From: Octopus sinensis
Lineage: Eukaryota
Direction of reading: 5' to 3'
DNA: 64,000 bases
NCBI RefSeq assembly: GCF_006345805.1
Contig: NC_043000.1
Coordinates: 51,708,001-51,772,000 of the forward strand
Shown: one piece after another, positions 26,166-64,000 of the stretch
Layout of the letters: each line of letters opens with the position of its first letter
Position numbering within the stretch: position 1 is the first letter of the stretch
Position numbers and translations under genes: made by a program
Notes under the pieces: model-generated
The model's input: only the letters and a program-made list of their open reading frames with translations
What the model was told of the DNA's origin: nothing
Databases searched by the model: none

Positions 26166-27672
26166 TACACACACGTAGGCACATGGCATATTTACCAAAG
26201 AAAATTATTTCAAGACAAGCCTTGTTACGTGTTTATCATTTCATCCATCCAAGATCCTATCTCCCTCAACAGCTTGTTCCACATTTCTTTTGATATTTAC
26301 CCTATCAGATTGTACTCGTACTTTTATTTACTTTTGTACTTTTATTACGTAATTCATACACTATTTAAGGAAACCGATATCCTTAATTTTTCTCCTCAAA
26401 GTCTCACAAATCTATCAACGAATAGATTTTTCTGCAAAATACGTTCACCGACAGATGTAGGCTACATTACACCACCTGTAGTTGGTCTAAACAAGTAGGA
26501 GTGGGAGAAAAGAGAGAAAGAGAGTTGCTGTGAAATATCTTGAGTTGTGTCTTGAAAAGAACTCCACTCGTAGTATATATGTGCATGTATAAATATATAA
26601 GTATATGTGTATATGTGTGTGTGTATATATGTACGTGTGTGTGTGTGTGTATGTATGTTTGTGTATATATATATGTATGCATATATATTTATGTACGTAT
26701 GTATCTATATATAGAGAGATAGATAGATAGATATCTGTAGTTATATATGTATTAATAAATATGCATGTGAGTATATGTGTGTGTATACACATACATATGT
26801 ATATTTATAGATACATATATATTCACACATACATGCTTATTGATACACACACACATATATGCTTATACATATGTACCTATTTACACCATTTATGCTATAT
26901 ATGTATGTATGTGTGTGTGTGTGTATATATATATATATATATATATTCTAGTGGGTTGATTTTTGCAAGCAACATAATCTGTACCTAATTAATAAGTCAG
27001 ATAAAAGGGGTAATTTATCCTCCCATTCCCTGCCATGGGCACCTATTTTTTTCTTCTATCTTCTGCGCATCATTATACTTGATTTCTTTCGGTTTCTCCC
27101 TTTCTCTTTCCATCACTAGTTCTGCTTTGTTAATAGAGATAGTCTTTTATTCTAGATGCAAGTAGAAAAGATGTTTCTTAATTCTCGATTCTTGGGTTTT
27201 TAATCAGTATACGCTGAAGTAAGAATGCTTATAGGTTTGGATTCATTCCATTCAAAATGAACAGAATATCGATCAAATATATTCTTCTTGTTGTTTCTGC
27301 ATGTGTGTGTGTGTTTTAATATGCATGGATACATACATCCACACGTATGTGCATGCACGTATAATCATACATACGAATATGTGTCATATATATTTCACAG
27401 GTTTAATAGATGAGAATTGCTTCATAAATCTTCTTTTTATCTCAGTATTTGGGGCAGTCATTTCATGAATATTCCAAAAAGAATTCACACATACACACAT
27501 GCACGTATATATATATATATTTAGTATGCTGCATGTGTGTGTATGAATACACACACATAGTCACATGATGGCAAAGCTAGTACTAATCAGCAATGCTATT
27601 ATAAGTTGTTTTTTTTCTTGTTAGTGAAATATATATATGTGTGTGTGTAAAAATTCATCTCTTACTCTACAC

Positions 27673-27956
27673 CATCATCATCATTATTTAACGTCTCTTG
27701 TCCATGCTGGCATGGGTTGGACGGTTTGACCAGAGCTGGTAAGTTGAGGAGCTGATCCAGACTCCAGTCTGATTTTTGCATGTTTTCTGCAGCTGGATGC
27801 TGACCACTCCAAGAATATAATGGATGCTTCTACATGCCAGTTACATGACACCAGTATCTGCCACAACTACGATTTCACTTGGCTTGATAGGTCTTCTTCT
27901 CAAGCATGGCTTATTGCCAAAGGTCTCAGTCATTTGTCATTGCCTCCATGAGGCCC
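27673..27956 (-). mobile_element. RTE-like LINE 3' end (long 3' UTR type)
   Basis: Minus translation GLMEAMTND*DLWQ*AMLEKKTYQAK*, then a UTR ending ccgtccaacccatgccagcatgg...acgttaaa and a (GAT)n tail. Confidence 0.8.
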
Positions 27957-29399
27957 ATTTATATATACATTTATAATATAACTGCGGTAAAGAATATTTA
28001 TAGTAGAGCTAATACAATTTGAAATAAATGCAAACATGTTTCCATGAGAAGTGCAGTAGGAAGTTTGAATTTTTATATTAATATTCACCAATACACAGCC
28101 TCTGTGTTAATATTGCTAATTCAGTTTCATAGGTGGAAGAAACGGTTTTGTGCATAGGTCAGTCTTTTAAATACAGCTCTTGGCTGTTCTGTGTTATTAG
28201 TAGTGAGATCATAACTCTGTTATTATACCGCTTGCAGTTACTACTTGGCATGGAAGGAATCTGCTATACATGGACAGGTTCTGCATAATATGTACTATGC
28301 AGGAAAAGTACTCTAATAGCCTGAAAACTTAGAGCTTGATATTCACACAGACATGCACACACACGTGTATGTGTGAATAATGTGTATATATATATGTATG
28401 TATGTATGTATATATATATTAACAATATCAGGGTAATAAAGATTTTAGAAAGTTTTACTATCTGTGGCCTAGCATATAGAAAAATTAGTCAATAGATGGT
28501 AAATGTTTTTTATTTTTCATTCCTTTCAAGTTTTTATCCCTAATAGTGGTTTGTACTTTAGCTGTTCCTTCTAGCGTGAAAGGAATCCTATGATGGATAC
28601 CTCTTATGTGTTTAAATGTACACTGTATTTTCATATATATATATATATATATATATAAATATACACATACATGCAAACATAAGCACACACACATGCACTT
28701 ATATACATTTATTATGCACAGTAAGTGCGTGATGTAGCGTGGGAGTTTAGATCATTGTGAACTCAAATTGTATTTGTTGGTCTTTTAATTATTTTATTAA
28801 TGTTCCTGGAAAAGGCACGAACTCCTTCATTCTTGTTCGCTTGCTACATGAAGACAATAGGGCTAATATACTACTAATGGAGATCTATGATCAATAAACG
28901 CTAAACAATTCAAGTTCCGCATGAGATAAATATTTATCCTCTGTATGTGTATGTAAGTATGCACATGCGCATGTATGCACATCTTTGCGTGCGTGCATGT
29001 GTGTGTGTGTGTGTGTGTGCATGCATAAGCATTAGGATTTTGAGAAATAATGCAATAACTTCCAACAGGCATTTAATCACGTATCTTCCGCTGACTGTTC
29101 TACAGTGCCATGGCTATCGTTGCCTTCAGGAAGACTAAATTAGAAAGCTGATGCCAGTATTTCAGTTCTGTTTGCACGTCTACTTGGTCAGCAGAGAATC
29201 TAGCAAAGAAGAAAATCTTTATTTTCAACAAGATTGAAAGTGTAATTACATCATAGAATGGAGATGATCCCAAATAGCCAGCGGCTGGTCATTGGCGATG
29301 TGCACCACTTGAATATATTCTTACAAAATCTTGTGGTTTAACTACACTCACACATACACACATTTATATACAATACATCATGTAGACATACATGCATAT

Positions 29400-29720
29400 G
29401 TACGTATATATATATATATATATATATATATATATATATATATATATATATATATATATATATGTGTGTGTGTTGCGTGTGTATGTATATATATATATAT
29501 ATTTATCTATATATATATGTGTATATGTATATATATATATGTGTGTGTATATGTATATATATATATGTGTGTGTATATGTATATGTATGTATGTGTGTGT
29601 GTGTATATGTATATGTATGTGTGTGTGTGTGTAGCTCTCTCTCTATCTATATATATATATGTATGTATATGTATATAATATATATATGTATATATATATA
29701 TGTATGCATACGTATAGCTA
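29400..29720. repeat. Long (TA)n/(TG)n mosaic microsatellite
   Basis: Seen directly; source of several YIYI and VCVC ORF artefacts. Confidence 0.95.
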
Positions 29721-30017
29721 TGTATATATTTATATGTATGTGTGTGTATGTAAATGTTTTTATATACATACCCCTATGTATGTGTGTGTATGTAAATGTT
29801 TTTATATACATACCCCTATGTATGTGTGTGCATAGATATACATATTTGTGTGTGTGTGTGTTTAGGGGTATATATGTAAAAACATTTTATGAATGTTGGT
29901 ATAGTAGAAGGTATAGAGATATAGTTAATATATACTGGTATAGCAAGACATTGTCAGAAACCTATGTCTACATCCATGGATACATACATGCATGCACACA
30001 AAAACATACATAGAAAA

Positions 30018-30235
30018 ATAATAATCATTTTCCATTTACTTTTCCACGCTTGCATGATTTGAACAGGTCTTCTACTCAGCATCTCTCCGTTTATTAGATC
30101 TTTTGTGTGAGGTTCACCTTCCTGGAATCACCTTTTACTATTTCTGCCCAGGGCTTTCCTTGATCTCCCTCTTCCACAGTTTCATTCATCTTGGATATTC
30201 TCATGCTTCTTTACCCATCTGTTATCCTTCATGTG
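30018..30235 (-). mobile_element. Old RTE-like LINE 3' end (short 3' UTR type)
   Basis: Minus translation with a frameshift: HMKDNRWVKK...CGRGRSRK-WAEIVKGDSRKVNLT, matching the RTE GRGRPRKTW motif; ends catgcaagcgtggaaaa. Confidence 0.7.
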
Positions 30236-62454: not shown

Positions 62455-62660
62455 AAACTGGAGATTCGTTTGCATGCCAGGCATAATTGCTTAGTGGCAT
62501 TTCATCTGTCTTATGTTCTAAGTCAAATTCTGCCAATGCTGACTTTGCCTTCATCCTTTTTGGGGGTCAATAAAATAAGTACAAATTGAGCACTGGGATC
62601 AGTGTAATCGACTTATCCCCCCTTCCTGAAATTGCTGGCCTTGTGCCAAAATTTGAAATC
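62455..62660 (+). mobile_element. SINE A (A2 tail), decayed
   Basis: gactttgccttcatcctttt...taatcgacttatcc...gctggccttgtgccaaaatttgaaatc. Confidence 0.8.
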
Positions 62661-63386
62661 AATACACACACACACAAATATTCTTGCAAAAGCTGTAATG
62701 TGAATATATATGTAAAACGCATGCATGTTTGTGTGTGTATATATATATATATACATACATGCACATAGGCAAACACACATGCATATACAATCTACTTTGT
62801 TCTGTATTATAAGCAATATAAATGGTAGCACCACGCTATAATCAATAGTATAACAGTTTGTATTTTGCTTGTCTTCTCCACACAAGTAAGTAATCAATTC
62901 TCTCCCTCAGTCTGACTTGTCAAGAAATCAAATTGTTATCTTTCCTCCGTTACTCTTGCAGGAAAACCAAATTATTCTTTCGTTCCATCATCCCCATACC
63001 GAGAAAAAAAAAATCAATTCCTTTTTTTGTCTGTCTGTCTGTCTCTGTCTATACCTCTGTCTGTCTATTGTCCCTTGCTCTCTCTCTCTCTTTTGCTCTC
63101 TCTCTCTCTCTCTCTCTCTCTTGCTCTCTCTTCCCCAGTCTTTTCATGAACATGCTTGATGTCTCTTTCTCACCCTGTATACTCACACAGACACACATTT
63201 CTGCACTACATCTCTCTTTCTAATCTTGATCTTCATCTCTGTCTCGCTATCTCACCATTTTCTCTATAAAATAAAGTTGAATCTTACACCCCACTCCATT
63301 ATTCTAATCACATACATTTAACACGAAGTAGAAATCCGAAAACAAGCTATTTCTGTAATTGGCATATATGTGTACATTCTTATATA

Positions 63387-63617
63387 GATTTCTTTACTAC
63401 CCACAAGGGGCTAAACACAGAGAGGACAAACAAGGACAGACAAACAGATTAAGTCGATTACATCGACCCCAGTGCGTAACTGGTACTTAATTTATCGACC
63501 CCGAAAGGATGAAAGGCAAAGTCGACCTTGGCAGAATTTGAACCCAGAACATAATGGCAGACGAAATTCGGCTATGCATTTCGCCCGGTGTGCTAACGTT
63601 TCTGCCAGCTCGCCGCC
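63387..63617 (-). mobile_element. SINE A1 with 10-bp TSD
   Basis: Same subfamily as 17707; ttcttatata at 63377-63386 and 63622-63631. Confidence 0.93.
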
Positions 63618-63660
63618 TATGTTCTTATATATGTATAAGTACATGTGTGTGTGTATGAAC

Positions 63661-63966
63661 ATTATCCTCCCAAGCACAAGTCCAAGCAAGGTTGTTTATG
63701 GAAGACCAGCAGTACCCCATGCATACCAGCCTTCCCCTCTTCATACCACTGATGTTATCCAAGGGAAAGGATGAAGGCCAATACAGCTTGGCGCCAGTGA
63801 TGTCGCAGCTTGTTTCTTTCTATAGCTGAGTGAATGGGAAATAAAATGAGCAACAAGAAATAAAGAATCTTGCTCAAGCACACAACATACATCCTGGTCT
63901 GTGAGTTGAACTCACTACTCATGACAGTGAGCCCGACACTTAAACCACTGAGCTGTGCACCTTCAC
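63661..63966 (-). mobile_element. SINE C1
   Basis: Reverse complement of the family sequence seen at 46101, from the head through to the aggttgtttatggaagaccagcag region. Confidence 0.87.
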
Positions 63967-64000
63967 ACACACATGCGCGCACATACACATACACACACAC

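What the first reader, a model, noticed from the sequence alone, without database searches (positions are those of the whole stretch)
27000..64000. Step in CpG decay reveals a probable methylated gene body with no visible gene
Seen in paralogue pairs counted by eye. SINE A1 at 17707 has 19 CpGs against 13 at 63387, with about 7 CpG-to-TpG/CpA changes on the right and about 1 on the left. The Helitron at 22839 has 13 CpGs against 7 at 38790, about 6 being transitions. SINE D at 13168 is intact while 43258 shows several changes. The SINE B 3' half at 40620-40700 has lost essentially all the CpGs kept at 13650. The RTE at 27900 has CGA-to-TGA/CAA changes. The transition looks gradual over about 27-31 kb. 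Established: mollusc methylation is mosaic and concentrated in bodies of broadly expressed genes. Inference: the right part is intronic within such a gene and the left part is unmethylated intergenic or regulatory DNA.
Basis: partly seen in the sequence, partly recalled or inferred. Interest (0 to 1): 0.7.

Follow-up and report, generated by a model that had tools for sequence, protein, structure and literature searches.

The report
Methylation footprint boundary in octopus DNA
One side of this octopus genome window has lost about two thirds of its CpG sites, the mark left by long-term DNA methylation in the germline, while the other side has not; this is a real but ordinary case of the patchy methylation known in molluscs, and no gene could be found under it.

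Summary
CpG observed/expected is 0.92 for 1-19 kb, 0.55 for 19-30 kb and 0.31 for 30-64 kb (0.91, 0.52 and 0.28 in unique DNA). Of the 16 dinucleotides only CG differs strongly, and TG and CA rise in step.

The stated refutation fails. In a 16-copy SINE family, left and right copies are equally diverged at non-CpG sites (0.197 against 0.183), but have lost 39% against 82% of ancestral CpGs. This points to long-standing germline CpG methylation on the right and none on the left.

The boundary is broader than stated, a gradient from about 19 to 30 kb. There may be a right shoulder from about 60 kb.

The closest transposon relatives place the window in Octopus. The published methylome there shows methylation confined to the bodies of a subset of broadly expressed genes and almost absent from intergenic transposons. 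A gene body is therefore the likeliest cause, but it is inferred. No coding exon, Pfam domain, PDB relative or Rfam RNA was found, and my protein searches had limited power. The left part could also be the unmethylated 5' third of the same gene.

The phenomenon is already known, so interest is low.

The parts
1..19000 (.). CpG-normal domain, read as unmethylated in the germline
   Evidence: CpG o/e is 0.92 overall and 0.91 in unique DNA, with 31 CpG per kb. The five SINE-core copies here kept 61% of ancestral CpGs at a non-CpG divergence of 0.197.
19001..30000 (.). Graded left shoulder of the depleted domain
   Evidence: Unique-DNA CpG o/e is 0.52 and patchy, from 0.33 to 0.80 per kb. The change-point likelihood is flat over 19-30 kb. 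Young CpG-rich inserts at 22836-23179 and 25789-26022 raise the local values.
30001..60000 (.). Core CpG-depleted domain, read as methylated in the germline for a long time
   Evidence: Unique-DNA CpG o/e is 0.15-0.41 in every 2-kb bin. SINE-core copies on the right lost 82% of ancestral CpGs at a non-CpG divergence of 0.183.
60001..64000 (.). Partial recovery of CpG, possibly a right shoulder; the domain is cut by the window end
   Evidence: Unique-DNA CpG o/e is 0.45-0.54. The young A1 SINE at 63379-63632 has still lost 5 of 18 ancestral CpGs with only 5 private non-CpG changes, so methylation probably reaches this far.
17690..17960 (-). A1 SINE copy on the left, used as reference for the family; its tRNA-like sense strand is the window's minus strand
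   Evidence: It has 20 CpGs and keeps 17 of 18 ancestral CpGs.
5800..6039 (+). A1 SINE copy on the left
   Evidence: It is 92% identical to 17701-17940 and keeps 16 of 18 ancestral CpGs.
25789..26022 (+). A1 SINE copy in the transition zone
   Evidence: It keeps 13 of 18 ancestral CpGs and has 16 private non-CpG changes.
63379..63632 (-). A1 SINE copy on the right
   Evidence: It keeps 13 of 18 ancestral CpGs; 5 decayed to TG or CA, with only 5 private non-CpG changes.
33633..33801 (-). SINE-core copy on the right, the clearest single probe
   Evidence: Its non-CpG divergence is 0.104, yet 13 of 14 ancestral CpGs are decayed.
13290..13460 (.). SINE D copy on the left, paired with 43085-43258 on the right
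   Evidence: The pair shares 8 CpGs; 5 were lost on the right and 0 on the left.
43085..43258 (.). SINE D copy on the right
   Evidence: It is 85.7% identical to 13290-13460, with 5 CpG-to-TG/CA changes.
22836..23179 (.). Helitron-like repeat copy in the transition zone, paired with 38782-39152
   Evidence: It has 13 CpGs against 7 in its partner; 5 decayed in the right copy and 0 the other way. I did not test the Helitron assignment.
38782..39152 (.). Helitron-like repeat copy on the right
21285..21695 (-). Remnant of the C-terminal zinc-finger region of a LINE ORF2
   Evidence: tblastn matches residues 1103-1212 of P0171 (endonuclease, reverse transcriptase and C2H2 domains) with E 3e-14. 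Pfam gives weak C2H2 hits.
21567..22079 (+). Remnant of a retroelement C-terminal domain; it was used to identify the genus
   Evidence: An exhaustive search found 470 homologues. The best are 82% identical (Octopus vulgaris CAI9730066.1) and 81% identical (O. bimaculoides XP_014788340.1).

Best explanation
The window spans the edge of a domain of long-standing germline CpG methylation in an Octopus genome.

From about 30 kb to at least 60 kb, with a graded shoulder at 19-30 kb, cytosines in CpG have been methylated over evolutionary time. 5-methylcytosine deaminates to thymine, so CpG has decayed to TpG/CpA about five times or more faster than other sites change by transition. This has driven CpG o/e down to about 0.3 in unique DNA and in resident transposons alike. 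The first 19 kb were not methylated and keep CpG near expectation.

Shown here: the step, its specificity for CpG, and its independence from repeat age.

Inferred from published octopus methylomes: the methylated domain is most likely part of the transcription unit of a constitutively expressed gene, mainly intron, whose coding exons are absent from, or not recognisable in, the window.

Inferred from other animals: methylation is targeted to transcribed bodies and copied by DNMT1/UHRF1.
For: - Size of the step: CpG o/e is 0.92, 0.55 and 0.31, and 0.91, 0.52 and 0.28 in unique DNA; dLL 118-127.
- Specificity: only CG differs among the 16 dinucleotides (right/left ratio 0.32). TG and CA are up 11-12%, and GC o/e is about 1 on both sides.
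- Repeat pairs: left against right gives 247 sites with CG on the left and TG/CA on the right, against 24 the other way. These pairs are not independent.
- SINE family, leave-one-out consensus: CpG lost 39% on the left (5 copies) against 82% on the right (10 copies), at equal non-CpG divergence of 0.197 and 0.183. Fisher p = 4e-10. The region effect after adjusting for divergence has p = 7e-12. The ratio of CpG to non-CpG transition rates is 1.4 on the left and 5.4 on the right.
- A1 subfamily: the right copy lost 5 of 18 CpGs with 5 private non-CpG changes. The left copies lost 2 and 1 with 5 and 10.
- Genus: Octopus.
- Literature, PMC9476566: under 10% of CpGs are methylated; they cluster on the bodies of a subset of broadly expressed genes; intergenic DNA and transposons are nearly unmethylated; the pattern is the same across tissues.
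Against: - No exon was found. There were no Pfam domains in 4955 aa of non-repeat ORF pieces from 19-64 kb. There were no PDB relatives for any ORF piece of 24 aa or more. There were no Rfam families or tRNAs.
- Open candidates flanked by splice sites are no denser on the right (2.0 per kb) than on the left (3.0 per kb).
- There is no TG-against-CA strand asymmetry and no consistent base skew that would mark a direction of transcription.
- Thirty or more kb of a housekeeping-type gene without a recognisable exon is somewhat unexpected.
- No methylation was measured. CpG depletion records past methylation in the germline, not the present state.
Confidence: 0.7

Rival explanations
1. Left and right lie inside one gene whose 5' portion is unmethylated and whose 3' portion is methylated. 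The boundary is then inside the gene, and the left part is not intergenic.
For: [quoted passage not shown] The transition is gradual over about 11 kb rather than a sharp step at a promoter. SINE sense orientation is biased the same way on both sides, 12 to 4 overall, which is not significant.
Against: No exon was found on the left either. This is a variant of the gene-body explanation, not an alternative to methylation.
Confidence: 0.15
2. The right part is a methylated domain that is not a protein-coding gene body. It could be an unannotated long non-coding transcription unit, or methylation aimed at something other than genes.
For: No coding exon, domain or structured RNA is recognisable in 45 kb. 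PMC9476566 reports slightly higher methylation on intergenic repeats than on repeat-free intergenic DNA, and relatively high methylation on satellites.
Against: The repeat fraction is about the same on both sides (24% left, 28% right), and unique DNA is as depleted as repeats. So methylation is not aimed at repeats here. The region is not satellite DNA. In octopus, methylated CpGs are strongly enriched in introns and exons. My exon searches could miss weakly conserved or short exons.
Confidence: 0.12
3. The right-hand repeat copies are simply older, so the CpG difference reflects age and not methylation.
For: Some right-hand copies are old, for example 47638-47823 with a non-CpG divergence of 0.357.
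Against: Non-CpG divergence is the same on the left and right (0.197 against 0.183; Mann-Whitney p = 0.77), while CpG loss differs (p = 0.008 by copy, 4e-10 by site). The copy at 33626-33807 has a divergence of 0.104 and lost 13 of 14 CpGs. The left copy at 5795-5976 has 0.092 and lost 3 of 15. Unique DNA shows the same step.
Confidence: 0.02
4. A regional difference in mutation or repair unrelated to 5mC, such as GC-biased gene conversion or recombination on the left, maintains CpG there.
For: GC content is somewhat higher on the left (0.368 against 0.338 in unique DNA).
Against: GpC, CC and GG o/e do not fall on the right; only CpG does, with a matching TG/CA gain. By my own arithmetic, the missing CpGs alone account for roughly 1.8 of the 3.0 points of GC difference. 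Non-CpG transition rates in repeats are equal on both sides, 0.096 against 0.105.
Confidence: 0.04
5. The step is an assembly join between unrelated sequences, such as a chimera or contaminant.
For: None specific.
Against: The same SINE families, at similar divergence, and the same kinds of microsatellite occur on both sides. The change is graded over 11 kb, not abrupt.
Confidence: 0.01

Closest known systems
Mosaic gene-body methylation of invertebrates and its CpG o/e footprint, as described for Octopus bimaculoides (PMC9476566), oyster and Ciona
   Same: Methylated and unmethylated compartments lie next to each other. The methylated one is depleted of CpG with a TpG/CpA excess. Transposons inside it share its fate. 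CpG o/e is an established proxy for past germline methylation (PMC5870242, PMC8857923).
   Different: No gene, exon or transcript could be tied to the depleted block here, and no methylation was measured. Published analyses work gene by gene. Here the boundary is seen in non-coding DNA, using repeat copies as internal clocks.
CpG decay of Alu and L1 copies in methylated mammalian DNA
   Same: The logic is the same: compare repeat copies with their consensus and separate CpG transitions from other substitutions. The excess is of similar size, five-fold or more here against roughly ten-fold in mammals (the mammalian figure is from my own knowledge).
   Different: In mammals nearly all copies decay because methylation is genome-wide. 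Here decay depends on which compartment a copy landed in.
Vertebrate CpG islands
   Same: A CpG-normal stretch lies next to CpG-poor DNA.
   Different: The CpG-normal part is at least 19 kb long and is not GC-rich (GC 0.37). In octopus it represents the default unmethylated state of most of the genome, not an exception.

Membership tests
Germline-methylated compartment of a mosaic invertebrate methylome | Strong CpG depletion relative to neighbouring DNA | tested here: met
   CpG o/e is 0.28-0.31 against 0.91-0.92, with dLL 118-127.
Germline-methylated compartment of a mosaic invertebrate methylome | Depletion is specific to CpG, with a matching TpG/CpA excess; GpC is unaffected | tested here: met
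   The right/left ratio is 0.32 for CG, 1.12 for TG, 1.11 for CA and 1.10 for GC.
Germline-methylated compartment of a mosaic invertebrate methylome | CpG sites mutate faster than other sites within the compartment, independent of sequence age | tested here: met
   The ratio of CpG to non-CpG transition rates is 5.4 on the right and 1.4 on the left, at equal non-CpG divergence.
Germline-methylated compartment of a mosaic invertebrate methylome | 5-methylcytosine is actually present on the DNA | not testable with these tools
   This needs bisulfite or nanopore data for this locus.
Germline-methylated compartment of a mosaic invertebrate methylome | The host organism has a mosaic methylome | tested here: met
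   The closest transposon relatives are from Octopus vulgaris (82%) and O. bimaculoides (81%). The octopus methylome is mosaic (PMC9476566). The identification is at genus level only and rests on one transposon fragment.
Gene-body methylation (methylated domain = transcription unit) | The domain coincides with an expressed gene (exons, transcript) | tested here: inconclusive
   No exon was found by Pfam, PDB or Rfam. The searches detect only well-conserved exons: 40 aa or more at 65% identity or more. The searches of the large protein collection failed their own positive control (against 38).
Gene-body methylation (methylated domain = transcription unit) | The domain edge lies at a transcription start or end | not testable with these tools
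   No annotation or RNA data were available. No strand asymmetry was seen.
Transposon-targeted methylation | Depletion is confined to, or stronger in, repeats than in unique DNA | tested here: not met
   On the right, unique DNA has o/e 0.29 and repeats 0.37. Repeats on the left are not depleted (0.98).
CpG island | A short (about 0.5-2 kb), GC-rich, CpG-rich segment in a depleted background | tested here: not met
   The CpG-normal part is at least 19 kb long, with GC of 0.35-0.39.

The most novel reading that the evidence does not exclude
A germline-methylated block of 30 kb or more in an octopus genome that is not part of any protein-coding gene. It could be a long non-coding transcription unit or another target of methylation outside genes. 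That would be an exception to the rule that cephalopod methylation is confined to the bodies of expressed genes.
Probability: 0.12. Interest if true: 0.45.

Novelty: already known. Interest (0 to 1): 0.15.

Why it matters
Biologically it is one more instance of the mosaic methylome already described for octopus and other molluscs. It would matter only if the depleted block proved not to be a gene. That would point to an unannotated transcription unit, or to a methylation target in cephalopods other than gene bodies.

Tried and rejected
1. Large protein collection, concatenated ORF queries.
- Searches found nothing.
- The transposon ORFs that I added to as a positive control also found nothing. 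An exhaustive search of one of them later found 470 homologues, including an 82% Octopus hit.
- A shorter 932-aa query recovered only two distant LINE proteins and again missed the Octopus hit.
- I therefore treat as weak negatives. All three searches of that tool are spent.

2. Six-frame Pfam scan by DNA reference.

3. Exact look-up of ten long window ORFs in the collection. None is on record.

4. Amino-acid-composition ranking and splice-site ranking of ORFs. The top candidates are low-complexity or unconvincing, and candidate density is no higher on the right.

5. CpG-retaining unique segments on the right as possible exons (28701-29180, 32501-32860, 42721-43084, 59841-60300). They are microsatellite-like or diverged SINE sequence, not coding-like.

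6. Strand asymmetries to infer the direction of transcription (AT and GC skew, TG against CA). There is no consistent signal.

7. 'RTE at 27900'. There is no reverse-transcriptase signal.

8. Age of repeats, repeat-targeted methylation, base-composition drift and assembly chimera were each considered and rejected; see the rival explanations.
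Full report
OBSERVATION

The window (64 kb, 35% G+C) shows a large change in CpG content. In 2-kb windows CpG observed/expected (o/e) is 0.73-1.39 up to 19 kb and 0.13-0.46 from 27 kb onward. GpC o/e stays near 1 throughout.

A Poisson change-point model gives a log-likelihood gain of 118 for one break (0.86 against 0.33). 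Two breaks give a gain of 127, near 19.0 and 26.75 kb, with o/e 0.94, 0.65 and 0.33.

I masked every intra-window repeat and microsatellite (27% of the window) and repeated the analysis on unique DNA. The step remains: 0.91 (1-19 kb), 0.52 (19-30 kb) and 0.28 (30-64 kb). In unique DNA the change-point likelihood is flat from about 19 to 30 kb. The transition is therefore a gradient of about 11 kb that begins at 19 kb, not at 27 kb.

Within 30-60 kb every 2-kb bin lies between 0.15 and 0.41. At 60-64 kb o/e rises to 0.45-0.54, which may be the start of a right shoulder.

Of the 16 dinucleotides only CG differs strongly between right and left (ratio 0.32). TG and CA are 11-12% higher on the right, and the others stay within 14%.

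They hold up.
- A1 SINE pair 17698-17954 against 63379-63632: 12 shared CpGs, 7 positions with CG on the left and TG/CA on the right, and 1 the other way.
- Helitron-like pair 22836-23179 against 38782-39152: 13 and 7 CpGs, 5 shared, 5 decayed on the right and none the other way.
- SINE D pair 13290-13460 against 43085-43258: 8 shared, 5 lost on the right, none on the left.
- SINE B piece at 40596-40712: it lacks five CpGs that its relative at 55634-55755 keeps.
- Over all left-right repeat alignments there are 247 positions with CG on the left and TG/CA on the right, against 24 the other way. These pairs reuse the same copies and are not independent.
- I could not verify the 'RTE at 27900'. 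Pfam finds no reverse-transcriptase signal in the ORFs there.

THE REFUTATION TEST

I aligned the 16 copies of the SINE core family in the window. For each copy I built a leave-one-out consensus that is aware of CpG, then counted ancestral CpG sites and other sites separately.
- The five left copies have a non-CpG divergence of 0.197 and have lost 39% of ancestral CpGs.
- The ten right copies have a non-CpG divergence of 0.183 and have lost 82%.
- By site, Fisher's test gives p = 4e-10.
- By copy, CpG loss differs (Mann-Whitney p = 0.008) and non-CpG divergence does not (p = 0.77).
- In a binomial model with divergence as covariate, the region term gives chi-square 47 (p = 7e-12).

Per site, CpG transitions run at 1.4 times the non-CpG transition rate on the left and 5.4 times on the right. 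The right-hand value is a lower bound because of saturation.

The copy at 33626-33807 is as little diverged (0.104) as the left copy at 5795-5976 (0.092). It has lost 13 of 14 CpGs, against 3 of 15.

Within the young A1 subfamily, the right copy has 5 private non-CpG changes and lost 5 of 18 ancestral CpGs. The two left copies have 5 and 10 private changes and lost 2 and 1.

The age explanation is refuted.

WHAT IT IS

Loss that is specific to CpG, matched by a TpG/CpA gain, equal in unique DNA and repeats, and independent of age is the signature of 5-methylcytosine deamination in the germline. The right part has therefore been methylated for a long time, and the left part has not.

The repeat fraction is similar on both sides (24% and 28%). 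Repeats on the left are not depleted at all (o/e 0.98). So methylation is not aimed at repeats; repeats take on the state of the compartment they sit in.

By my own arithmetic, the missing CpGs account for roughly 1.8 of the 3.0 points by which G+C is lower on the right.

ORGANISM

A retroelement remnant at 21771-22052 (+) was searched exhaustively against 1.84 billion representative proteins. It has 470 homologues. The best two are an Octopus vulgaris predicted protein (CAI9730066.1, 82% identity) and an O. bimaculoides protein (XP_014788340.1, 81%). The window is thus from Octopus or a close relative. This is a genus-level call that rests on one transposon fragment.

COMPARISON WITH WHAT IS KNOWN

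Macchi, Edsinger and Sadler (BMC Biol 2022, PMC9476566) report the following for O. bimaculoides.
- Fewer than 10% of CpGs are methylated.
- Methylated CpGs cluster on the bodies of a subset of genes that are highly and broadly expressed.
- Intergenic DNA and transposons are almost unmethylated.
- The pattern is the same in brain and hatchling.

They distinguish four gene patterns:
- methylated throughout, including the promoter (5482 genes);
- methylated in the body and downstream of the transcript end, but not at the start (8972 genes);
- unmethylated in the first third and methylated towards the 3' end (6545 genes);
- unmethylated (17,586 genes).

CpG o/e is a standard proxy for past germline methylation in invertebrates (PMC5870242, PMC8857923).

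Given this, a methylated block of 30-45 kb that includes transposons is most likely part of a transcription unit. The boundary could be any of three things: a promoter edge with the gene running rightward; 3' spill-over of a gene on the minus strand; or the within-gene transition of the third pattern. In the last case the left part would not be intergenic. I cannot tell these apart. There is no TG-against-CA asymmetry and no consistent base skew.

SEARCH FOR THE GENE

I found none.
- Rfam and tRNA scans are empty.
- I collected all non-repeat, non-low-complexity ORF pieces of 35 aa or more from 19-64 kb, on both strands (95 pieces, 4955 aa). They have no Pfam domain at E up to 1 and no relative among all PDB chains at E up to 1.
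- The same holds for pieces from 1-19 kb against PDB.
- It also holds for 314 shorter ORFs (24-39 aa) from 19-64 kb; the best E-value was 0.45.
- A local simulation shows that such concatenated queries detect an embedded exon of 40 aa or more at 65% identity or more, or of 30 aa or more at 80% or more. Weaker matches are not found reliably. Only well-conserved exons with a solved relative would have been seen.
- Open segments flanked by splice sites are no denser on the right (2.0 per kb) than on the left (3.0 per kb).
- The few unique segments on the right that retain CpG are microsatellite-like or diverged SINE sequence.

My three searches of the 5.8-billion-protein collection used concatenated queries and must be discounted. 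The transposon ORFs included as positive controls were not matched to their 82%-identical Octopus relative (against 38, 39). 'No visible gene' therefore stands as a description, not as proof of absence. A long intron, a non-coding first exon with a long first intron, short or fast-evolving exons, or a non-coding transcript all remain possible.

OTHER FEATURES

Two retroelement remnants lie tail to tail at 21.3-22.1 kb. One is the C-terminal zinc-finger region of a LINE ORF2 on the minus strand. It matches residues 1103-1212 of a protein with endonuclease, reverse-transcriptase and zinc-finger domains, at E 3e-14. The other is the C-terminal domain mentioned above, on the plus strand. A second, weaker remnant of that domain lies at 11101-11430.

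VERDICT

Its boundary should be moved left, to a gradient over 19-30 kb. The reading as a methylation footprint is strongly supported. The reading as a gene body is the best available inference from published octopus methylomes, but it is not demonstrated here. The description of the left side as intergenic is open. The phenomenon is already known, so interest is low. The residual interest lies in the small chance that the block is not a gene.

Noticed in passing
window 16363-16985: A complex tandem array with units of about 163 and 219 bp, 89-98% identical, built from TA/TG/CG-containing microsatellite-like sequence. It has the highest CpG o/e in the window, 1.3-1.4.
   Followed up: no
window 24028-24471: A local tandem duplication of a unit of about 140 bp, in about three copies that are 93-95% identical, flanked by CA repeats.
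   Followed up: no
window 56824-57284: Two SINE-core copies in inverted orientation form a 460-bp imperfect palindrome with 78% complementarity.
   Followed up: no
window 60855-61131: A stretch of about 280 bp that matches its own reverse complement at 70%.
   Followed up: no
window 42001-54000: The plus strand is pyrimidine-rich here (AT skew -0.09 to -0.16, GC skew -0.09 to -0.21). Neighbouring blocks at 33-36 kb and 54-60 kb are skewed the other way. The region 42-47.5 kb is also the most GC-rich part of the right side, at 0.37-0.40.
   Followed up: partly
window 11101-11430 (+): A second, weak remnant of the same retroelement C-terminal domain as at 21567-22079, with tblastn E about 1e-5.
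   Followed up: partly
whole window, 16 SINE-core copies: Twelve of the 16 copies have their tRNA-like sense strand on the window's plus strand, with the same bias on the left and right. This is not significant, so I drew no conclusion about a transcription unit.
   Followed up: partly
window 55541-55770 and 63379-63632: Some repeat copies inside the depleted domain still keep most of their CpGs. The second has few private substitutions and is probably a recent insertion.
   Followed up: partly
tool behaviour, against 38: Word-index protein searches with long concatenated queries missed an 82%-identical Octopus protein that an exhaustive search found. Negatives from such queries should not be trusted.
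   Followed up: yes
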